DNA from: Paragordius varius | Taxonomy: Eukaryota > Animalia > Nematomorpha | DNA length: 64,000 bases | Direction of reading: 5' to 3' | Assembly: GCA_964247055.1 (NCBI GenBank) | Contig: OZ176055.1 | Coordinates: forward strand, 4,588,001-4,652,000 | Shown: piece by piece, positions 11,501 through 40,383 of the stretch | Layout of the letters: each line of letters opens with the position of its first letter | How positions within the stretch are numbered: the first letter of the stretch is position 1 | Translations under genes and position numbers: made by a program | Notes under the pieces: model-generated | What the model saw: only the letters and a program-made list of their open reading frames with translations | Databases searched by the model: none | What the model was told of the DNA's origin: nothing

Positions 11501-14456
11501 TATTACCTTATCAATTTTTATATAAAAATTATTTTTTGGTAATTTAACCTAGAACTTAAATTTTTATTATCATATTATTGTAAATTGATTTTGCTAAAAT
11601 ATAAGGATCAAACATTTTAAAACTAAAAAATATTAATAGTTTTGGAACTTCCATATTCTAAAACATGGATATAACTTAAATCCATTTGAAACTAACAGCT
11701 GATTTTATATGTTTACTGAAAATTTTCTGTCAAACATATTCAAATTCAAATTAATTAATTTAATTTGATCCTAATTTTTTTATAATGCGCCTAAAAGTCC
11801 ATAGAAAATGGATTATTTGGCTTAAAATCACATATTTTTTTTAATTTGAATAACTTTGAGCTAGAAACTACCCGAAAAGATCCGAAAGTATTAAATGCCT
11901 CTGTATGTTTATTTTATTTCAAATTTTCTTACATTACTAATTTTTAATGAATTCTGTATTATATTTTTTAGGCATGGGACATTACGACTAAAACATGCGG
12001 TTACACCAATCACACTGTATTGCCCGAGGCTTTGGAACGTTGGCCAGTTAATATGTTTGAATTGCTGTTACCGAGACATTTGGAAATTATATATGAAATT
12101 AATTCCCGATTTTTGCAGGTCATTTTTTTCTCCTAGTGTCATAGTTAAGAAATGTGTATTAAGTTTAATATGGTAAATTATTTAAAAAAGCCATTTGAAA
12201 TAAATTAATTGTCCTTAAAAGTTTTGCAAACATGGTGGGTAGATTATAATTAAATTATCCAGACATATAAAGTTTGGAAATTTAGCCCATATCTTACAGT
12301 ATGCATTTTAATGGTTGCTTATTTCACACTATAGTTGGGCAATTCGCATCACAAGAGCTTATGGAAAAGCAACAAAATGTTGAATAAACAATCTTTACCT
12401 TTCTTTCTTTCGATAGACTACTGTGTTGCAAATTACCCTACTATAGTCTGAAATGAGCAACCATTAATATGCATTGTGTTACTAACTTTTTATTAGAATT
12501 TAAATCATGATTATGATATACCATTTACAATTCAATTTCTCCCTTAAACAATTCAAATTCACCCTTGAACAATTCAAATTCACCCTCGAACAATTCAAAT
12601 TCACCCTCAAATAAAATATATGTTTTTTAAGATTAAAAATTATTTATATTTTATATATTTTAAAAATTTTGTTTTGAATTAAAATAATACTGAAAAAAAT
12701 AATAAATTATACCATAAACATAAATTTCATATTAATAATGAATTATATTAGTTCGAAAACACATAATTTATTTTTAGGGTTTTGAATTGTTCAAAGGTGA
12801 ATTTGAATTGTTCAAGGGTGAATTTGAATTGTTTAAGGGTGAATTTGAACTGTAAATGGTATATAATTAAAATACTATTCATACAATTAACAACATTTCA
12901 GAATCTAAGGTATTTAAATTTTTATTTTTCAAAAATTTTATCATCCACAATAGTTGGTTAAAGAAAAGTGGCCACATGATGATTCCCGGCTTCGTAGAAT
13001 GTCTCTAATCGAAGAAGATGGAGGCAAACGCATTAATATGGCCCATTTATCGATTGTCGGGAGTCATGCTGTTAATGGTGTTGCCGCCATACACACAGAA
13101 ATTATCAAGAACACCACGTAAGAAATTTCGAATTTGATTTGCTTGCCAAAATTTGTGTGACATTTTATTGCTGTATAGCCGCAAATTTATACATATACGA
13201 TTTAATATAAAAAAGTAAAACTGTGGTTTCTTTTTAAAAAACCAGATTTAGATTTTTTATTTTTTGCTATAGTTTATACGATTGGATTTGTTAAAATGGA
13301 CTTGAGGGTCTCTCGACTTCAAAGCCTAGTCGTATTAGTCTATCTAAAATTAGAAATTATGGCTTATAATAAAAAAAGCGTTTTTACTATTTAAATTACG
13401 CATTATTATAAAACCTGACTTTTATTTACACATATCAGCCTTATATTAACATCTTTATTTTGTTTATATATAAAAGTTTAACGGTAACTATATCATTTTA
13501 TATTATTATTTGTGAATTTAAACGGTAAATTTATCATTTTATATGTTAGGTTCCATGATTTCTATGAATTATGGCCCCAAAAGTTCCAAAATAAAACGAA
13601 TGGTATTACACCACGTCGTTGGCTTTTATTGTGCAATCCAGGTCTTTCTGATGTGATAGCCGATGTAATTATGACTTAAATATTAATTTATTACAAAGTT
13701 TCACCAAAAAATATTAAAGTTATATTGATGTTTCATGTAGAAAATTGGAGATAGCTTTGTGACACATCTCTATGAGCTTAAACAATTGCGTGATCATTTG
13801 GATAATAAGGCTTTTGTGTTGGCCGTAATGAAAGCCAAACAGGTACAATTATATTTTACATGAAATTTGTGGTAATCAATAAGTTATGGCGCCTTGTTAA
13901 TTATTTTTTAGTTTTAAGTTTTGAAAGATTTATTGACAAAAATGTAACAAAAATAGAATATAATGTAATTATAAAAAATAGCACTATGTTCCTAATCAAT
14001 AATGGCGCATTAACATGAAATAATTTTTTTGAGATTAAAATAATTTATATTAACCAAACCAATTTTCATTATTTAATTGAAAATAATAATAGGATCGACA
14101 AACTTTATCAAGTGTGAAATGAAATCTTTCAATCAAAATAATAATTATATTAAATTTTAATTTTGATAAATATTCTGTTTTAATATTTCTTCTAAATATA
14201 TACCACCCTATCATACACATTATTTTGTAGGAGAATAAACTTAGATTTGCGTCGTTTATTGAGAAACATTATAACATTACGGTTGATCCGTCGGCCATGT
14301 TTGATGTGCAAATCAAAAGAATTCACGAATATAAGCGACAATTGCTTAATTGCTTGCATATGATTACGCTTTACAATAGAATTAAGAAAAATCCCAATGC
14401 CACTTTTACGCCCAGAGTCATAATGGTTGGAGGAAAGGTATTTACAATATTTTATA

Positions 14457-17300: not shown

Positions 17301-18572
17301 TCACATTTTAGGAACATTTAATAAAAAATTTGATGATCCAGGAAGGTAGGAAACTCCGCGTGATTGAGAAAGTTGATAAGCTATATCTTCGGCTGCTTCT
17401 AGCCTTCTCAACTCAATCAATCCTTCACCAGATTGTGCCACGGCTTTTGCAATTAATTCGGCGGCCTATTATATAGAATATATGATATGACCGAAATCGT
17501 TGTTGAAATACTGAAACCAAAAAAACGCAATGCCGAATTTTTTTGGTGTTTTTTATTTTATTTGTATGGTAAAAGTAGACTATTTTTTAGCACACATAAT
17601 ACGTGTAATTATCTAGCTATTTATGAATATTATATCAAAATGATTAGGCTTCCTTAAAAACGGAACTAAAATAATAATCATTTTTAAATAAGGGAATCAA
17701 AATTAAAACTAATTAGTCGCAAAAATTATTAGAAAAACCGTAACTCTGGTTTATGTGAAACCGGGACCTAAAATAAAGTTAATTTAGAATTAGAATTTAA
17801 CGGGATTATTACGGTTCATAAAAAGTAAAGTTAATTATTAGAAATTAACCAAAATAAAATACTTTTGAGTCGCCTTCAGCAGCAATAATTGCAGCTTTTT
17901 TGGTTTGTTCAGCTTTTTCGACTCTGAATCGGGCACGCTCCGCTTCTTGTTGCGCAACTTGTTTTAATTCAACGGCTTCTGTAAATTCTCGCCCAAAACT
18001 TAAATGCGTTAGCGATATATCATCCAAGAAAAGTCCAAAACGTGATGCTCTTTCCGTAAGTTCGGAATTGACTTTGCGTGAAACAAGTTCTCTTTGGGTT
18101 ATTAACTCACTCGCGTCGAATTGAGCGACTACCGCTTTTAATACCTAACATAAAAGGATAAAAGCATACTTCGTTAGTAATGGAGGGCAAAACTCTTTCC
18201 TCAAAATCGATACCCAAATTTTTGTATATATCTGGTAAGCGGTCTGGCATAGGTCGAAATAAAATTCGCAAAGTGATGCTAACATTTTGCAAATCTTTGC
18301 TTCCAGTAATAACAGGAACGTTTCTTGGTTTGGATCGAATATCAAATATAATTGGCTTTTGTATGAAAGGAATCAAAAAATGTGTCCCTTCACCTGTAAC
18401 ATTTGGTTTTACTCCTTTAAAGCGATCAAAAATAACAGCTCTTTGGCCTCCATCAACATTAAACAAGGCAGAATTTATAATTCCACCAGTAATTGCTAAT
18501 CCCAATCCTATGATTAGCGTAAAATCCCAATATACCTAATCGTCCAATGTTATTAAACAACTGGCTGCTCAT
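17301..18572 (-). CDS. PHB1: Prohibitin 1 (SPFH/band-7), 4 exons, 273 aa
   Basis: Exons 18572-18536, 18507-18170, 18144-17863, 17465-17301 (822 nt). Translation includes [83 protein letters not shown]. Confidence 0.96.
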
Positions 18573-29800: not shown

Positions 29801-30812
29801 TAATTTTTATTAGGATAGAAGCATAATTTAAATTAAGACCGTTTCCTTCGGTAATTTTTAAATATATTAACTTTAGGTCTGGGGTATTTAGATACCCCAA
29901 ATCGGAGCGTTATTTAATAATAATACATCATATTATAGTTTCGTTTTAAATTTGTTTATAAATACAGTTTACATATATAACTTAATAAAGCGAAAGTAAT
30001 TATTTAAAGTTGACTGATATATTTTTTACGTGCTAATCAAAAAACCATAAAAATGACCTTAGCAAATTAAGCTAATATTGGGCAAAAAATACATTAAGAT
30101 GGAGGTAGTGTAAAGACAAATAAACATAAGTTTCCAAATTTAAACGTGCGAAATACAATGAATCTTGAGGGTCATTATAATAAAAATTATATACGGCAAA
30201 ATTGCGACAAAATTTATATAATTTTAAAAAAGATGAATTAAAAAAAGGATCTTTGGAAATTTATAATCAATATCAATCATTATAATTTTAATAAGTGCAA
30301 ATAATTATAAAATAAAAATTTGTATTAACCTTATTGGATGAGTTTGTAACAACCAGAGAATGAGCACATACAGATATATATCCATCTACATTAACGCCTA
30401 AATCACTAATATATATAAAAGCACAATACATTTTAACTAAATCATTTTCTTTGAGGATAACATCAGGGTCACTCTTTAAGGGAGAAAAATGGCACACGCA
30501 ATTATTAATGGAAATGCAAGTGGGAAAAGCAATACCTATTCGTAATAAAATAGTAACAACCTTTTTTAATATTTTTATCTTTCTTAAATATTTTGGAAGT
30601 TTCTTCTTCAATCCATTTATCACCTTGTGCACAAATATCTATAATTTTAACATCGACTTTGCACATTTCAATCAGTTTTTTCATAATTTCTACTGTTAGC
30701 TAATATATTAACTTGTAGCAATTTCGGCTGCAGTCGTATATTTGGTAACAACCAATTCATTTGACGGCGTTATGGACTTTTCATCAGATTTATTAGATTC
30801 AACCGACGACAT
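26819..30812 (-). CDS. PA2G4: Proliferation-associated protein 2G4 / EBP1 (M24 aminopeptidase fold), 12 exons, 377 aa
   Basis: Exons 30812-30713, 30689-30561, 30535-30430, 30405-30330, 28549-28402, 28110-28032, 27773-27695, 27664-27586, 27343-27292, 27265-27171, 27088-26961, 26881-26819 (1134 nt). Motifs: [75 protein letters not shown], Lys-rich C-terminus SKKKKKK. Confidence 0.94.
28556..28684. repeat. Two-copy tandem duplication, period 67 bp, next to the PA2G4 intron 4 acceptor
   Basis: CAAGTATAAATGCGTCAAAAA...AAATATTTTGAAAAGCTATTTATAAAG starts at 28556 and at 28623. Confidence 0.85.
29365..29909. mobile_element. Inverted piggyBac-type MITE copy in PA2G4 intron 4
   Basis: CACTTGGATAC...GGGGTATTTAGATACCCC; reverse complement of 18794-19343. 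Flanks are ATAA and TTAT. Confidence 0.78.
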
Positions 30813-33812: not shown

Positions 33813-34542
33813 TATATATATAACAATTTTTTGAAAGACAATGGAACCGGAACCAAATTTTGGCAAAAAATGGAATCGGAACCATTTGATCGATAACTGT
33901 TTTTTTTCTATCAACATTGTCTGGAAACGGAACCAAGGCGCAATAAATTTGACTTGAGACTTTAAGACAGGGTATTAATAAATCTATACAATTTATTTAG
34001 TGAAATCATCAAATAACAATAAATATAAATTTGCGGTGTTCGTATACCTTTTTGTGTGCATAATTTGGCGCATATAAACTATGATAAAATTTATACTAAA
34101 AAAATTCGTAAAATATAAAAATGTTACTTAACACATTAATATCAATCCATTTAACCATTAATTACTTTTCACCCTTTTTTTGTCTATAATAATTCAAAAC
34201 ACTCTATAATATTCATAAATAATTAATTTGGTCCATTTTGTTTTTGTACAAAATGAAAATATTGTCCAATTGGTTAAATGTATGCACCATGGTTTTCCCC
34301 CTTAAAACAATGCCAGTGACACTTTAAACTCATGAAAAATCGCGCTAATTCAATATTACAAGGATTTAATTAAAAGCTATTATTTGCGTCTTTTATGAAA
34401 TAATAGAGATAAAAACAAATATAGATTTTGACTTTTTCATATCATATCTTGGCATAGATATATACTAACTATAACTGTTAATTTATTTAAATCTATATTT
34501 TTGGCTCATAATTTTCTTTTTTTTATTAATTTTTCAAATTTC

Positions 34543-36132
34543 ATGAAAACTGCAAGAATGAATTTTAGCATTAATGATACCATACTGAATGATAAACATG
34601 TTGATTTCCGAATCGTTTCAAAGAATATTTCTATCCTTGAACGAATATTTTATGTGTATTTGTTGGGTCCGTTTCTTATTTCAGGAATTATTGGGATATT
34701 ACTATTTTTTATGATTTCATATCAGTTAAAGAAAATGGGGAAGCAAAATAATTTGACCATCACTCAAAACATGGCTAGTACCAACTTTAATATGAACAAC
34801 AACCAAAAAAATATAAGGTTATCAATCACTTTAAACGATTCAGTTAAAGACCACTTAAGTTCACACATGTTTGCCAGTAAACAAGATTTGATCAAACCTA
34901 TGCCAAAAAATGATTTGATCAGAGTGCCCAAGGGTTCGTTCAAAGAATATTTTTTAATCTTTGTTTATGTCATTTTAATTTGGGATTTAATAGCTTGTGT
35001 AAATTTCATATTTTTCCCATTCCTATATTATTCAAGTACGGATTTGGGCTTATCAAATTCCATTTTTATGTTTTATACTACCCGTGTTACCTTTTACGTT
35101 GAGCAAGTTTGTGCAACCAATCTGAATTGGAACACGGCTGCCATAGCGCTCAATAGATTTTTCGCAGTTTTTTACCCTTTTGGATTATGTGCACCACACT
35201 GTGAGATCAACCATGAGCTAATTTCATCAGGTAACAACCAACAACCCAATAAAGAACCCGAAAAACAAAAGAGTAGAAAAAGAAAATTAATGCACATCCT
35301 CTATTATTTTATGCATCACAGAGTGGGTAAGAGTGGACAGACCAAAATCATTGTGACATCAATAGGATTAGCCTCATTACTAATCTCTTTGCCATATCTT
35401 TTTTATGTTGATGTCAAAAAGGGACTAAGGTGCAAACCCATCCTAAATTTTACAGAAAATATGATAGATGACCACACTCATGAAAATATTCTCAGTTTAA
35501 ACACTGAAAAATTGCCGGACAAACTAAAAAATGGAACCAAGGTATTTCATTTGGCATCATTAAGTAAACATTACATTGCATATCTCTTTATTCGCAATGA
35601 AGAATTTCATGTTGTAAATCGATGTCCTCAGTTATTTTTTTATTACTTTGAAATGAGTTCATTTTATGTCACGTTCTCCAAAATATACGATAGATTTTTT
35701 AGCACAGTTATATATCTCATTCCAACCGTGATCATTTTGATATCCCACCTATTAATATTTTTCCGTCTTTGGCTCAGACGAAAAAGAAAGAATAGAAATC
35801 GAGTCGGTACTTTTTATGCTAACGATACTTCACCGAATACTCGTGTGCCCTCTCAAATCAAACTAAATAAGTATGTGTTAACATTAGCCATTAGCGTAGA
35901 ATTTTTAATTCTCAATATCCCTTACGTGTGTTACGTATTTCTGACTCAAAGATCCTGGGTCCAAGACGCTAACAATACGAAAATCAATAATTTTCAAATA
36001 ATCGCCAATTTCCTCAAATACATAAATCATGCTTTAAATGTTTACGTGAACATTTTATTCAACTCAACTACCCGATTTTATGTTTATTATTTTTTTCAGC
36101 GCTGGTTTACAAAATTGACATGCCTAAAATAA
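34543..36132 (+). CDS. Intronless rhodopsin-like (class A) 7TM GPCR, orphan peptide-receptor-like, about 529 aa
   Basis: Single long ORF; first in-frame ATG at 34543 (the track starts at an upstream TTG). Seven hydrophobic segments, N-terminal sequons NFS/NDT/NIS, TM2 Asp (LIWDL), ALNRFFAVFYP at the DRY position, LLISLPY in TM4, Cys in ECL2, YLIP in TM5, FLILNIPY in TM6, YINHALN in TM7. Confidence 0.85.
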   Translation: MKTARMNFSINDTILNDKHVDFRIVSKNISILERIFYVYLLGPFLISGIIGILLFFMISYQLKKMGKQNNLTITQNMASTNFNMNNNQKNIRLSITLNDSVKDHLSSHMFASKQDLIKPMPKNDLIRVPKGSFKEYFLIFVYVILIWDLIACVNFIFFPFLYYSSTDLGLSNSIFMFYTTRVTFYVEQVCATNLNWNTAAIALNRFFAVFYPFGLCAPHCEINHELISSGNNQQPNKEPEKQKSRKRKLMHILYYFMHHRVGKSGQTKIIVTSIGLASLLISLPYLFYVDVKKGLRCKPILNFTENMIDDHTHENILSLNTEKLPDKLKNGTKVFHLASLSKHYIAYLFIRNEEFHVVNRCPQLFFYYFEMSSFYVTFSKIYDRFFSTVIYLIPTVIILISHLLIFFRLWLRRKRKNRNRVGTFYANDTSPNTRVPSQIKLNKYVLTLAISVEFLILNIPYVCYVFLTQRSWVQDANNTKINNFQIIANFLKYINHALNVYVNILFNSTTRFYVYYFFQRWFTKLTCLK

Positions 36133-37398
36133 CGTTATACGATTATCTTATCCTGTCTAGATTTGTTATATTTTAGTTTTCAGATTATATTAAATAAAAT
36201 AAATAAATTACATACAATTTTACAGAAATAATTTTTATGTAAATATTACGCAATTAACACCTACGGTATTTTCATTTTCTTATCATTGGAAGCCATATAA
36301 ATTAATTTAATTATCACATTTTTTCGTAATTCCAATAATATATATATGATGTTTAAAATTAAATTATTCCATTTAATTTTAATTATATGATTAAATATGG
36401 GTAGTCTTATTTATCAAAATGATTATCCATTATGTAATAAAAAATGAAAATGTTTGGAGGAACTTAATTATAGGAAAAAGGGCGAACGTGTGGAAAAATG
36501 GGCCTTAATACTATTTTTGGTTGGAATTATATGGGGAAGCCGGTGGTACCCTTATTATATTAATTACTCTAAGTGACTTGAATCCATACTACTAAAAGGG
36601 TAGTCAAAGAAACAAATATTGCAAGGTGGAGAATATATTTAAAACGATGTGCGCCCCATAGCATTATAATTATTTTTTAATGGTTAGTTATCTTCTGTTT
36701 GTTAAAACAAGACTTAAATTATATTATAATTTATGATTGTCTTTATATAAATGATATTTTAGCATGTTTTTATGTTAAATTGAAAATTAGGATTATTTCC
36801 CAAATTACCAAACTATTATCGAAAAAATGATAAACCATATTAAAAAATAATATTTAATCTCAATTGTCAGTTAATTTACTTCAAAGTACATAATTTATTT
36901 TTGAAAGGTTAAAATGTTGAAGAGTGGTTTCAAGTTTTTAGGGTAAATTTACTATGGATATGATCGAATTGAATGTTAAAGGCTGAATCGAAGCATAGAC
37001 ATGCTTTCGTTTTAAATAATTTTTTATGAGGCAGGGTGCTAAAATACACATTTTGTAATGGTTTCTCAATTAAATTTAAATAAAAAAGTTTAAATATATT
37101 TGTAGAGCTTTTATGAGTTCATGCCGATTATCCTTCAATTTTATATCGGATATCCTAGATTTGGATAAACTCCCCAAAGTTGCACGTACCTTCAAGCAAG
37201 TAACTTTTTGGGGTTACATCCCGACGAACAAAAAATATAAATTATACATTATGTTTATTAATATTTATTTAGGCATAAAAACCACCACTAATCAAACTCA
37301 GCTAAATCAAAAATTGTACACATCACATTAGATTATTTAATAAAATGTAATAAAGAGAAATAACACATTTAAATATGCATGTTAATGTTTTTCATATA

Positions 37399-38376
37399 TT
37401 AATTTCGTTTTTTGGCAGCTTGCCTGGTATAAGGTTTTTGTGGTTCTCGAAGCGATCGTCCAGGTATCCAATTGTAATAGAATATTTGTAATAAAATTAT
37501 ACTATTAAGCACACTGGCTAAAATGTATGGTAATATAACTAGCATATCCCCCGTTTCCTGAATAGAAGTGTAAATACGAGCGAAACAGCCTCCAGTCATA
37601 AGTATGAAAGTTAGGGCAGATAATTGTCCAGTACCTGAGTTTTTAAGGTTCTCTAAAATTTGTAGCACTTTACTAATGACAATTATTGGCAAGTTTGCAA
37701 GTTGAAAAGATGAAATGAGACTTAACGGTACTATCCTATAAGGACCCGAACACATCATCATAGCTATCACATATGTGATGGAAAATAGTAGCGGTTTGAC
37801 ATAATTAGTATGTGGCCGCTCATTAATTTGATTTTCATTGGGTCTCAGACTTCTCCTACCCTTTACTGGAGATAAGGTTTTTGCACTTTGATGAGTTTTA
37901 TTCGGTGGTGCCTTTCCTTGATAGAGTAAACATAAATTTGCGATAATAAATGTTTGTAGTGCGGTAAAAAAAGTATCACCCCAGGAAGAAAATGAAAAAT
38001 TTCGAGCTAAGCTATACACCATATTTGCGGAAATGGCAAATAGTTCAATACATACAGCTGTGAAGCTTATACCAAAAGCATTTTTGGCATTCCAAATCTT
38101 TATAATTTGTGGAATTTTAACGAATGCCGATCCTGTTACTATTGTATAACTAAGCAATTTGCTAATAAAAAGTGATAGGCAATTTCGATGTGGTATATCA
38201 CGACCCAAAACATAATGGGAAAACATTTGAAAAGGAATTAAATAAACAGAATTTAAAATATGTTGAATTGATTCAAACCATGACAATTCCTGATCAAATC
38301 TATGTCCAAACAAATTATGAAAACATTGTTGACCCAAATCAGTCTGTAAAAAATTAAGAAGAAAGCGGAGTATCAT
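37399..38376 (-). CDS. MPDU1: Mannose-P-dolichol utilization defect 1 (PQ-loop protein), intronless, 325 aa
   Basis: Single ORF with VKIPQIIKI (PQ loop), FSFSSWGD, GTGQLSALT, ARIYTSIQETGD. N-terminal QQCFHNLF...NCLSLFISK resembles the MPDU1 N-terminus EKCYDQLF...PCLKILLSK (recalled). Confidence 0.93.
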   Translation of the reverse strand: MILRFLLNFLQTDLGQQCFHNLFGHRFDQELSWFESIQHILNSVYLIPFQMFSHYVLGRDIPHRNCLSLFISKLLSYTIVTGSAFVKIPQIIKIWNAKNAFGISFTAVCIELFAISANMVYSLARNFSFSSWGDTFFTALQTFIIANLCLLYQGKAPPNKTHQSAKTLSPVKGRRSLRPNENQINERPHTNYVKPLLFSITYVIAMMMCSGPYRIVPLSLISSFQLANLPIIVISKVLQILENLKNSGTGQLSALTFILMTGGCFARIYTSIQETGDMLVILPYILASVLNSIILLQIFYYNWIPGRSLREPQKPYTRQAAKKRN

Positions 38377-38378
38377 AT

Positions 38379-38781
38379 TTATAGAAGAGCTATTCGCGAA
38401 TCAGCCAAATAAAAGCGATAATTTTCTGCAGCTATGTCTTGGTATTGATGTAAATAATCGTCGATTCCCAAAGGTCCAATTTCGCAATCGGCACAAGCTA
38501 GATATTTTATACTCTGATCCTTTTCTAATACTGTTTTTGTAAAACCGATATTTTCGAAAATATATATATCGTTGCTATTAACTCTCCAAAATTTATTTTC
38601 TTTTAACTGAGAATTATTGGTAACACTTATTTGTGGAAGAAAGATCTAAAATAATAAATATCCTAACTTCTTTATAAATTAATTTTGCCTTGTATGGTGA
38701 AAGAATGAGACACTGACAATTTTTGCATACAATTGATTTTTCGTTTTCTGAATCGACAACACACGCAGGATCAATTGTCAT
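38379..38781 (-). CDS. RABIF: MSS4/RABIF Rab-interacting zinc protein, 2 exons, 126 aa
   Basis: Exons 38781-38668 and 38645-38379 with a 22-nt GT-AG intron. CKNC near the N-terminus, FENIGF, YLACADCEIGPLG and FYLADSRI are Mss4-family motifs with four Zn-binding Cys. Confidence 0.92.
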
Positions 38782-40383
38782 AATGCATATAAACACATGC
38801 TAAAAATTTATTTAATATTAGTGGCAGCACGAGAATACAATTTTTAAAATATCGATAAGCAGCATTAAATACTTAATAATAATAATAAATTGTATCCATC
38901 GCCACACCACTATTAAACAAGACAATTCGTATTAAAAAATAAAATTCATGTATTTATGGTTGAAATTTTTATGCTTTTAAGATTATTCGAGCATTCCAAA
39001 AAATTTAATCGTTTCCTATAAATTAGTGACAAATTCTGTGAAAAATTCAAGGCCCCTAGTTTAACCCTCGTGTTGAAACCATACTCATTATGCCACAACA
39101 GTATAAAGCCGAAAATAAAATTATTAATTTAAATATTTTGACAGTATCGATGTTTTAACATTTCAACATTTTTTTTAGTTTTTTGTCCTAATTTACCTTT
39201 TGGGGTAGTTTTTAATAAATTAACTAAAGTTTTGAAAGCTATTTCATTAGATTTAATTATCATATATTGTTATAAGCGTAGATAAAAAAGCCTATATTTT
39301 TTACATCGCTAAAATTGGGACAGCTCTAACAAATGAAACGAACAGCCCTTATGAAAATTATAATAGATCAATTTTTGCTGTTAAATGTAGCCTGAAATCT
39401 TTTTAAAATAAATTATTTCTATTTTTTAACCATAATATATAATATATATTCTATTTGCCTGTTGCATTAGCGTTAAAAAAATTATTTATAAAAAAGAATA
39501 GCGGCAAAAATGTTTGAGATTATGATTTTTTTACATTTTAAATATTTTTAAAAAGTTTTTTTGCATAAGGGGCCTAAAAAACTAAAGAATATTTTTTCAG
39601 CTTAATACCTTAAATACTTTTCAACAAATATGAAATGATTCCACGATATAAAACTACCCTAAAAAGTAACGGGGGTGTTAATGATATTAAATGTTTTTTT
39701 ATAAATTGATGTCTGGTTTTTTCGAATTATCTTAATGAATTCTTCTCAAATAATTAAATTTGACTATTATTTAGGTATAGTGTTTTATAAAAATTAATTT
39801 GAATACTTTAAGAAGTATTTAAAATATCTATTCTGTAGCTATTTGAACGCATCTCAATTATTTATTAAATGTTAAATTGTAACAATTTACTTGCCGTCAA
39901 TTTTTCTTGGGTTTCTAAATCCTAATATAACAGATAAATAAATGTATGGCGAAAAAAAAATTAATCAATTTTTTATATTTAGAGATTTTTACAGCTGTGT
40001 ATAATCCGATTTTGTCGTAACTAAATTTTGGGCAGAAATTGGAAAACTTTACCTAAAATTTTTTATCACATACATATGTTAGATAAAATTAACCAAATCT
40101 AAAAGTTTAAGATTTGGTACAGAGGTACTTCAAAATGAGTCGGCAAAAAAGGGAAGTTATAAAGTCTTAAAAACATAAAAAATATTTTGCAGCGAAACTT
40201 ATGAAAATACATTTATTTGTATATGTATTTCCCTTGGGGGGTCCTAGAAAGTATGATTTTTATAATTCAAATTTGAATTGGCCATGGGGTCCTCAACTTC
40301 TCGAGACAATAGGGGAAATATATATGATTCATTTATATGAATTGTTAAAAACTGCACTTTTTTATGCAAGATATACATACGGC

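What the first reader, a model, noticed from the sequence alone, without database searches (positions are those of the whole stretch)
38343..38400. MSS4/RABIF stop and MPDU1 start are 2 nt apart: possible dicistronic or shared-exon unit
Seen on the minus strand: ...GCT CTT CTA TAA AT ATG ATA CTC..., with the stop at 38381-38379 and the ATG at 38376. There is no room for a poly(A) site or promoter between them, and MPDU1 is intronless in an intron-rich neighbourhood. The residues after this ATG resemble the MPDU1 N-terminus, which argues the start is genuine. Also seen: a strong acceptor-like CTTAATTTTTTACAG| at 38344, in phase 0 of MPDU1. Splicing MSS4 exon 1 (donor 38667, phase 0) to it would give an in-frame 38-aa MSS4-exon1/MPDU1 protein. 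Inference: candidate mechanisms are termination-reinitiation, leaky scanning, trans-splicing to an AG inside the MSS4 CDS, an internal promoter, or alternative acceptor choice. The pair would couple a Rab chaperone to an ER glycosylation factor.
Basis: partly seen in the sequence, partly recalled or inferred. Interest (0 to 1): 0.75.

Follow-up and report, generated by a model that had tools for sequence, protein, structure and literature searches.

The report
MSS4 and MPDU1 genes packed stop-to-start
In this horsehair-worm-type genome two unrelated housekeeping genes, MSS4 and MPDU1, lie two bases apart on one strand; a distant horsehair worm keeps the same pair 31 bases apart, so one RNA probably carries both, but no RNA data were available to show it.

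Summary
On the minus strand a two-exon MSS4/RABIF gene stops at 38381-38379, and an intronless 325-codon MPDU1 (PQ-loop) ORF starts at ATG 38376.

- **Not an assembly error.** DNA contigs from four runs (two studies) cross the junction without indels.
- **Conserved pair.** Gordionus montsenyensis has MSS4 then MPDU1 on one strand, 31 nt apart. The MSS4 C-terminus and the MPDU1 N-terminus match, but none of the flanking genes do. Daphnia and Brachionus do not have the pair.
- **Both ends are genuine.** The ATG at 38376 and the MSS4 stop are each supported by the Gordionus match.
- **Gene model correction.** The MSS4 intron is a 22-nt micro-intron (38667-38646).
- **Best reading (about 0.45).** This is a conserved dicistronic unit, with MPDU1 reached by scanning through or reinitiating after MSS4. 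The window's MSS4 has one internal ATG against 4-7 expected, and no canonical poly(A) signal before the cluster behind MPDU1. In Gordionus these signals are weaker.
- **Rivals.** A TSS inside MSS4 cannot be excluded. An SL-type operon fits poorly, because neither spacer holds an AG. The exon-1/MPDU1 fusion is not conserved.

No RNA was available, so the mechanism is inferred. The scan has already noted more than 20 similar tight pairs elsewhere in this genome, including COX17-DPH3, which was followed up.

The parts
38668..38781 (-). MSS4/RABIF exon 1: ATG at 38781, 38 codons, carries the first CxxC (CKNC) of the zinc site
   Evidence: translation; Pfam Mss4, profile positions 2-26; tblastn to Gordionus exon 1, 63% identity
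38646..38667 (-). 22-nt micro-intron of MSS4 (GTTAGG...TTTTAG), phase 0, at the position of a 1,264-nt intron in Gordionus
   Evidence: Exon 2 read from 38645 aligns from its first residue (IFLPQ) to residue 40 (IFLPH) of Gordionus MSS4, which is exactly at that gene's exon boundary. The alternative acceptor at 38607 (61-nt intron) would delete these 13 aligned residues.
38379..38645 (-). MSS4 exon 2 (88 codons plus TAA at 38381-38379). The C-terminus ...SRIALL* matches Gordionus ...SRVSLL*. No ATG in any frame.
   Evidence: Pfam Mss4 3.7e-15; 45% identity to P0027 over the full length; ATG count 0
38377..38378 (-). 2-nt spacer (AT) between the MSS4 stop and the MPDU1 start
   Evidence: Bridged by independent DNA contigs.
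37399..38376 (-). MPDU1 (SLC66A5-like, PQ-loop) CDS, intronless, 325 codons
   Evidence: 41% identical to Gordionus MPDU1 from the first residues onward.
38344..38358 (-). Acceptor-like CTTAATTTTTTACAG inside MPDU1 codons 7-11. Probably just the codons for LNFLQ.
   Evidence: No phase-0 counterpart in Gordionus.
38726..38728 (-). The only internal ATG between the MSS4 start and the MPDU1 start. It is out of frame, has T at -3, and opens an 18-codon ORF.
   Evidence: offset 53 in exon 1
37254..37341 (-). Cluster of poly(A) hexamers behind MPDU1 (ATTAAA at 37341, AATAAA at 37269 and 37259). Likely the shared 3' end.
   Evidence: The only canonical hexamer between the MSS4 stop and this cluster is an AATAAA at 37902, inside the MPDU1 CDS.

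Best explanation
MSS4 and MPDU1 form a conserved dicistronic transcription unit of horsehair worms. One promoter upstream of MSS4 (above 38781) drives a transcript that runs through both ORFs to the poly(A) signals behind MPDU1 (about 37340-37250). MSS4 is translated from the first AUG in good context. MPDU1 is translated from the AUG two bases after the MSS4 stop, either by 40S subunits that scanned past the MSS4 AUG (leaky scanning) or by ribosomes that resume after terminating at the MSS4 stop (reinitiation).

Shown: the anatomy, the conservation of the pair, the genuineness of both ORF ends, and the scarcity of AUGs. Inferred: co-transcription and the mode of translation.
For: 1. Same order, strand and near-contact in Gordionus montsenyensis: MSS4 stop at L001 11679-81, MPDU1 ATG at 11713, spacer 31 nt.
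2. The proteins are only 45% and 41% identical, and tblastn finds nothing else shared between the 21.7-kb locus and the 64-kb window. The pair was therefore kept while its surroundings changed.
3. Daphnia MPDU1 and Brachionus MSS4 have other neighbours.
4. The MSS4 stop and the MPDU1 start are at homologous positions in both species.
5. ATG scarcity upstream of the MPDU1 AUG in the window: 1 internal ATG in 383 nt and none in the last 269 nt. The expectation is 7.1 from composition (P 0.007) and 4.0 from synonymous-codon resampling (P 0.013).
6. At the risky dicodons MSS4 uses AAC|GAA, AAC|GAT, GAC|GAT, CAG|TGT and GCG|TGT, whereas the local codon background (MPDU1 plus one unannotated 543-aa ORF) prefers AAT, GAT, CAA and GCA/GCT.
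7. Controls are not depleted: MPDU1 CDS 19 against 16.7, and the monocistronic Brachionus MSS4 has 9 internal ATGs (10 with its start) against about 9.1 expected.
8. All 4 internal ATGs in the two species have a pyrimidine at -3, while all 4 cistron starts have a purine.
9. In the window there is no canonical poly(A) hexamer between the MSS4 stop and 37902, and a cluster lies behind MPDU1.
10. The junction RNA is less structured than shuffles (z +1.65 and +1.33), which argues against an IRES-like fold.
11. Unchecked scan notes list more than 20 further same-strand pairs at 0-40 nt in this genome, mostly with a small upstream protein. One of them, COX17-DPH3, was followed up and was also conserved.
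Against: - No RNA evidence of any kind. No RNA run holds the locus, and the four runs laid are DNA.
- In Gordionus the ATG count (3) equals the synonymous-resampling expectation (3.0), so depletion there is only compositional (P about 0.05).
- The MSS4 AUG has a purine at -3 in both species, and G at +4 in Gordionus. That is not the weak context expected for leaky scanning.
- MSS4 (127-138 codons) is long for efficient reinitiation.
- Gordionus has an AATAAA 52 nt behind the MSS4 stop, inside MPDU1 codons 7-9, so a monocistronic MSS4 mRNA is possible there.
- ATG scarcity in MSS4 exon 2 would equally fit an MPDU1 5'UTR that starts inside MSS4.
Confidence: 0.45

Rival explanations
1. Two overlapping monocistronic mRNAs. 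MPDU1 has its own promoter and TSS inside the MSS4 gene body (exon 2, or the long intron in Gordionus). The MSS4 mRNA ends inside, or runs over, the MPDU1 5' CDS.
For: - ATG-free MSS4 exon 2 (269 nt) fits a 5'UTR of MPDU1 as well as it fits a dicistronic mRNA.
- In Gordionus the only exon-2 ATG lies 87 nt before the MPDU1 AUG.
- Gordionus has an AATAAA 52 nt after the MSS4 stop.
- A promoter embedded in the neighbour would also preserve the linkage.
- In Drosophila most dicistronic loci also make monocistronic isoforms (PMC4528330).
Against: - In the window the whole MSS4 gene is only 403 nt with a 22-nt intron, so the promoter would have to sit in constrained coding sequence.
- There is no canonical poly(A) hexamer for MSS4 before 37902.
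- This model does not explain why the upstream partner is usually a small protein in the other tight pairs noted by the scan (unchecked).
Confidence: 0.3
2. A nematode-type operon. A polycistronic pre-mRNA is resolved by spliced-leader trans-splicing to an AG just upstream of the MPDU1 AUG, coupled to 3' end formation of MSS4.
For: - Nematomorpha are generally placed as the sister group of Nematoda, which have SL-resolved operons (established knowledge).
- The pair and many other pairs are tightly packed.
- AGs exist inside the MSS4 3' CDS: AATAG|C 14 nt before the window ATG, and TTTTTTATAG|C 53 nt before the Gordionus ATG.
Against: - Neither spacer (2 nt, 31 nt) contains an AG, so the acceptor would lie inside the MSS4 CDS and each pre-mRNA could give only one of the two mRNAs.
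- The candidate AGs are not at homologous positions.
- The window has no poly(A) hexamer upstream of such a site.
- No SL RNA family was found in the window. This is weak evidence, since only 64 kb were searched.
- No paper in the library reports spliced leaders or operons in Nematomorpha.
- ATG avoidance over the whole of MSS4 is not predicted by this model.
Confidence: 0.1
3. Alternative cis-splicing from a shared 5' exon. MSS4 exon 1 (donor at 38667) is joined to the acceptor at 38344, giving an MSS4-exon-1/MPDU1 fusion protein, or to an AG just before the ATG.
For: Donor and acceptor are both in phase 0, and the acceptor has a good pyrimidine tract. Shared-first-exon loci exist elsewhere, for example the cholinergic locus (established knowledge).
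Against: - In Gordionus no AG in the first 15 MPDU1 codons lies in phase 0.
- The 11 residues that would be removed belong to the conserved N-terminus.
- The fusion would attach half a zinc site to a membrane protein.
- In 27% GC coding sequence such T-rich...CAG strings are frequent.
- Joining exon 1 to the AG at 38390 gives a 49-codon ORF that overlaps the MPDU1 AUG.
Confidence: 0.07

Closest known systems
Drosophila dicistronic loci (stoned, Snapin, Adh/Adhr, mei-217/218; 159 pairs in FlyBase r6.04, PMC4528330)
   Same: Two unrelated, separately conserved ORFs on one strand of an animal genome with a very short inter-ORF gap. For stoned and Snapin the upstream ORFs are poor in internal AUGs and the downstream ORF is reached by leaky scanning (as summarised in PMC11291117).
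   Different: Here no transcript has been seen. The spacing is 2 nt. The phylum (Nematomorpha) has no reported case. The upstream AUG is not in an obviously weak context. MSS4 and MPDU1 gene names were not found in that paper's supplementary lists.
Green-algal bicistronic genes (PMC7896298, PMC11291117)
   Same: The upstream protein is small in the loci that paper tested (TOM22, OST4). Inter-ORF regions are short and some have overlapping stop and start. Start codons are under-represented before ORF 2. There is no IRES-like structure.
   Different: In algae ORF 1 has a weak Kozak-like context and mutational proof exists. Here the context is purine at -3 and nothing has been tested. AUG depletion is clear in one of the two species only.
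Nematode SL2/SL1-type operons and tunicate operons
   Same: Same-strand gene pairs under one promoter in the lineage generally placed as sister to Nematomorpha. SL1-type and Ciona operons have no intercistronic spacer between the poly(A) site and the acceptor.
   Different: Those operons keep a 3'UTR with a poly(A) signal and a 3' splice acceptor between the stop and the next ATG. Here there are 2 nt and 31 nt without any AG, and no spliced leader is known in this phylum.
Viral termination-reinitiation (calicivirus TURBS, influenza B M2 UAAUG)
   Same: The stop of a long upstream ORF lies within a few bases of the next AUG.
   Different: It needs an upstream motif (UGGGA) that pairs with 18S rRNA. 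UGGGA occurs about 85 nt before the window's stop (around 38465) but is absent from Gordionus (reading), so it is probably a chance match.

Membership tests
Mss4/RABIF (Pfam PF04421) | Mss4 domain with the two CxxC zinc-binding pairs | tested here: met
   Pfam hits on both exons. CKNC is in exon 1 and CADC in exon 2. 45% identity to Gordionus MSS4.
MPDU1 / SLC66A5 (two PQ-loop repeats, PF04193) | Two PQ-loop repeats and the residues invariant among MPDU1 proteins | tested here: met
   PQ-loop at 6.5e-20 with 2 stretches. All named hits are MPDU1. 42 columns are invariant across the 11 aligned sequences, the window protein included.
Dicistronic mRNA locus | Two conserved non-overlapping ORFs on one strand with no room for a promoter or poly(A) site between them | tested here: met
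   2-nt spacer. 31 nt in Gordionus.
Dicistronic mRNA locus | A mature mRNA that spans both ORFs | not testable with these tools
   No RNA run holds the locus. The runs laid are DNA contigs. No transcript contigs were found for either species.
Dicistronic mRNA locus, leaky-scanning type | Start codons under-represented upstream of ORF 2, and a weak context at the ORF 1 AUG | tested here: inconclusive
   Window: 1 ATG against 4.0-7.1 expected (P 0.013-0.007). Gordionus: 3 against 3.0-7.7. The ORF 1 AUG has A or G at -3.
SL trans-spliced operon | A 3' splice acceptor and the upstream gene's poly(A) signal located between the two coding regions | tested here: not met
   No AG in either spacer. No AATAAA or ATTAAA between the window's MSS4 exon 2 and the ATG.
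SL trans-spliced operon | A spliced-leader RNA and leader-bearing mRNAs in the organism | not testable with these tools
   Rfam finds nothing in the 64-kb window. There were no RNA reads and no literature.
Termination-reinitiation (TURBS type) | A conserved 18S-complementary motif upstream of the stop/start site | tested here: not met
   UGGGA is present once in the window (about 38465) and absent from the last 150 nt of Gordionus MSS4 (reading).

The most novel reading that the evidence does not exclude
Horsehair worms use, genome-wide, a class of near-zero-spacer dicistronic mRNAs. In these a small housekeeping protein's stop codon sits 0-40 nt from the next gene's AUG, and the second protein is made by translational coupling (termination-reinitiation after ORFs of over 100 codons) rather than by spliced-leader processing. 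That would be an operon solution different from the one in nematodes, the phylum usually placed as their sister. MSS4-MPDU1 would be one anciently conserved example.
Probability: 0.25. Interest if true: 0.8.

Novelty: new member of a known kind. Interest (0 to 1): 0.55.

Why it matters
Nematodes resolve operons with spliced leaders. Whether their sister phylum has polycistronic units at all is not addressed in the searchable literature.

A gene pair held together at 2-31 nt across very divergent hairworms, together with many similar pairs noted in the same genome, gives a concrete set of loci. One long-read cDNA run would show whether Nematomorpha have dicistronic mRNAs, SL operons or embedded promoters.

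It also matters for annotation. Gene finders will tend to merge, truncate or drop such pairs, and they will miss the 22-nt intron.

Tried and rejected
1. **RNA evidence.** The look-up of sequencing runs returned no RNA holder. The four best holders are DNA, with continuous coverage and no intron skip. Exact-protein look-ups found no transcript contigs for Gordionus MSS4 or MPDU1, nor for the window MPDU1 from M1 or from M51.
2. **A third nematomorph.** Word searches with both MPDU1 proteins and with MSS4 exon 2 gave only Gordionus. P0025 has a signal peptide and no Mss4 neighbour. P0158 has no DNA held and no upstream gene was called.
3. **Downstream start at M51.** Rejected. It is not conserved in Gordionus, and the region upstream of it is conserved as protein.
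4. **61-nt intron model for MSS4.** Rejected in favour of the 22-nt intron.
5. **Assembly collapse.** Rejected.
6. **IRES-like structure.** Rejected. The junction folds worse than shuffles.
7. **Ciliate-type stop reassignment** (TAA read as Gln, which would move the MSS4 stop onto the ATGA). Considered and dropped. The 325-codon MPDU1 ORF has no in-frame TAA or TAG, the Gln codons tallied in the local background set are CAA and CAG, and the MSS4 C-terminus matches Gordionus at the TAA.
8. **Bacterial promoter and terminator scan**. Irrelevant for a eukaryote and at the level of the shuffles.
9. **Joined MSS4 protein.** The exons were searched separately by reference, and ATG counts were made exon by exon with the junction (GAA|ATC) read by eye.

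Full report
**Observation**

On the minus strand the sequence reads ...GCT CTT CTA TAA AT ATG ATA CTC.... The stop is at 38381-38379 and the ATG at 38376.

- The downstream ORF (38376..37399, 325 aa) is a PQ-loop protein (Pfam 6.5e-20). All its named relatives are MPDU1.
- The upstream gene matches Pfam Mss4 in both exons.
- In the MPDU1 frame a stop lies 8 codons upstream of the ATG, so 38376 is the first possible AUG.

**Is it an artefact?**

No. No RNA run holds the locus. The four best holders are DNA: coverage is continuous and there is no intron skip. Their contigs cross the junction without indels, including one from another individual with 34 substitutions over 1,347 bases and one filed under a second organism label.

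**What organism?**

The window is 27% GC. Earlier notes of this scan call it a horsehair-worm-type genome with 22-25-nt introns. My own data agree. The best MSS4 relative by far is that of Gordionus sp. m RMFG-2023, and MPDU1 shares lineage-specific N-terminal features with the Gordionus protein.

**Gene models**

- MSS4 exon 2 read from 38645 aligns from its very first residue (IFLPQ...) with residue 40 (IFLPH...) of Gordionus MSS4, exactly where that gene is split by a 1,264-nt intron. The window's intron is therefore the 22-nt GTTAGG...TTTTAG (38667-38646), not the 61-nt alternative.
- The MSS4 C-termini match (SRIALL* and SRVSLL*), so the stop is genuine.
- Gordionus MPDU1 aligns from its residue 1 with window residue 3, including the motif CFHxxFGxxFD. 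The ATG at 38376 is therefore genuine.
- The in-frame Met-51 has no counterpart in Gordionus.
- MAFFT with non-nematomorph MPDU1s placed their N-termini further in. Both nematomorph proteins carry about 32-35 extra residues between the first conserved Cys motif and the CL(K/S) motif.

**Conservation**

- In Gordionus montsenyensis (GCA_954871325.2) MSS4 ends at L001 11679-81, and an intronless 298-aa MPDU1 starts at 11713. The strand is the same and the spacer is 31 nt.
- The proteins are only 45% and 41% identical. MPDU1 is about as distant from the Gordionus protein as from Daphnia's.
- tblastn with all ORFs of the 21.7-kb Gordionus locus finds nothing else in the 64-kb window. The pair has stayed in contact while everything around it changed.
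- Daphnia MPDU1 and Brachionus MSS4 have other neighbours, so the linkage is not general in animals.

**Mechanism: what the sequence allows**

*Spliced-leader operon.* Neither spacer contains an AG. An acceptor would have to lie inside the MSS4 CDS, and the candidate AGs are not homologous. The window has no poly(A) hexamer upstream. Rfam finds no SL RNA or anything else in the window, and the library holds no report of spliced leaders or operons in Nematomorpha.

*Fusion by splicing exon 1 to 38343.* The arithmetic is right. But Gordionus has no phase-0 AG in the corresponding codons, and the residues that would be removed are part of the conserved N-terminus.

*IRES.* The junction folds worse than shuffled sequence (z +1.65 and +1.33).

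*Scanning-dependent translation from a dicistronic mRNA.*
- Between the MSS4 AUG and the MPDU1 AUG the window has one ATG in any frame (38728, T at -3), and none in the last 269 nt.
- Composition predicts 7.1 (P 0.007). Resampling synonymous codons on the same protein predicts 4.0 (P 0.013). Permuting the gene's own codons gives P 0.07.
- At every Asn or Asp codon followed by a G-initial codon, MSS4 uses the locally rarer C-ending codon. Before two Cys codons it uses CAG and GCG.
- The MPDU1 CDSs are not depleted. The monocistronic Brachionus MSS4, of similar GC, has 9 internal ATGs.
- Gordionus MSS4 has 3. That is low by composition (P about 0.05) but equal to the codon-resampling expectation, so the signal there is weak.
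- All four internal ATGs have a pyrimidine at -3, and all four cistron starts a purine.
- The MSS4 AUG is therefore not weak. That sits uneasily with pure leaky scanning and leaves reinitiation, which the 2-31-nt stop-to-start distance would suit, as an alternative.
- A TURBS-like UGGGA about 85 nt before the window's stop is absent in Gordionus.

*3' ends.* In the window the first canonical hexamer after the MSS4 stop is 477 nt downstream, inside MPDU1, and a cluster follows the MPDU1 stop (37341, 37269, 37259). Gordionus has an AATAAA 52 nt after the MSS4 stop, inside MPDU1 codons 7-9.

*Embedded promoter.* A TSS inside MSS4 exon 2 would explain the ATG-free exon 2 and the conserved linkage equally well. 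It cannot be excluded without 5' end data.

**Context in this genome**

Notes of this scan, which are AI notes and mostly unchecked, list more than 20 further same-strand pairs at 0-40 nt. Examples are STMP1-PET100, ANAPC16-like-RCL1, PFDN1-TMEM199, NDUFAF8-like-UTP6, PTRHD1-TMX2 and RPL24-NAGLU. One follow-up found COX17-DPH3 one base apart and conserved in a distant hairworm. In nearly all of them the upstream partner is a small protein, as in the green-algal bicistronic loci tested in PMC11291117; I did not check upstream ORF sizes for Drosophila (PMC4528330). I did not check these pairs myself.

**Verdict**

- The most likely reading is a dicistronic mRNA with scanning-dependent translation of MPDU1 (0.45).
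- The rivals are an embedded MPDU1 promoter (0.3), SL trans-splicing (0.1) and alternative cis-splicing (0.07).
- It would be a new member of a known kind (animal dicistronic loci) in a phylum where none has been described, and one instance of a pattern this scan has already met elsewhere in the same genome.
- Interest is moderate to high, limited by the complete lack of RNA evidence.

The exons were handled separately by reference.

Noticed in passing
window 38646-38667 (-); L001 10118-11381: The MSS4 intron is a 22-nt micro-intron (GTTAGG...TTTTAG) at exactly the position and phase where Gordionus has a 1,264-nt intron. This adds one more case to the micro-introns noted elsewhere in this genome.
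   Followed up: yes
window 39172-39650: A high-copy repeat about 400-900 nt upstream of MSS4. Contig depth is 20-40 times that of the flanks in three runs, with many loose ends and internal joints. Probably a MITE or other transposon family.
   Followed up: no
window 38897-38977: In contigs of all four runs, 79 bases upstream of MSS4 are replaced by 119 other letters (table 5). This is an indel haplotype in the putative promoter region. The flanks carry dense SNPs (38814-39092).
   Followed up: no
window 34501-36132 (+): A 543-aa open frame convergent with MPDU1, with no Pfam match and no counterpart in the Gordionus locus.
   Followed up: partly
window 37790-37915 (-), MPDU1 residues about 155-196: The window's MPDU1 has a hydrophilic insertion of about 35-40 aa (KAPPNKTHQSAK...NERPHTNY) between the two PQ-loop halves. 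It is absent from all relatives aligned and shorter in Gordionus. It contains the only internal AATAAA (37902).
   Followed up: no
window 38778-38798 (-): Two short upstream ATGs precede the MSS4 start. The first (38798) opens a 6-codon ORF whose TGA overlaps the MSS4 ATG (ATGA). Whether they are transcribed depends on the unknown TSS.
   Followed up: no
window 18107-18505 (-) and 30288-30632 (-): Exon-sized ORFs with Band_7/SPFH (4.8e-13) and Peptidase_M24 (6e-4) Pfam matches. These are neighbouring genes that I did not model.
   Followed up: no
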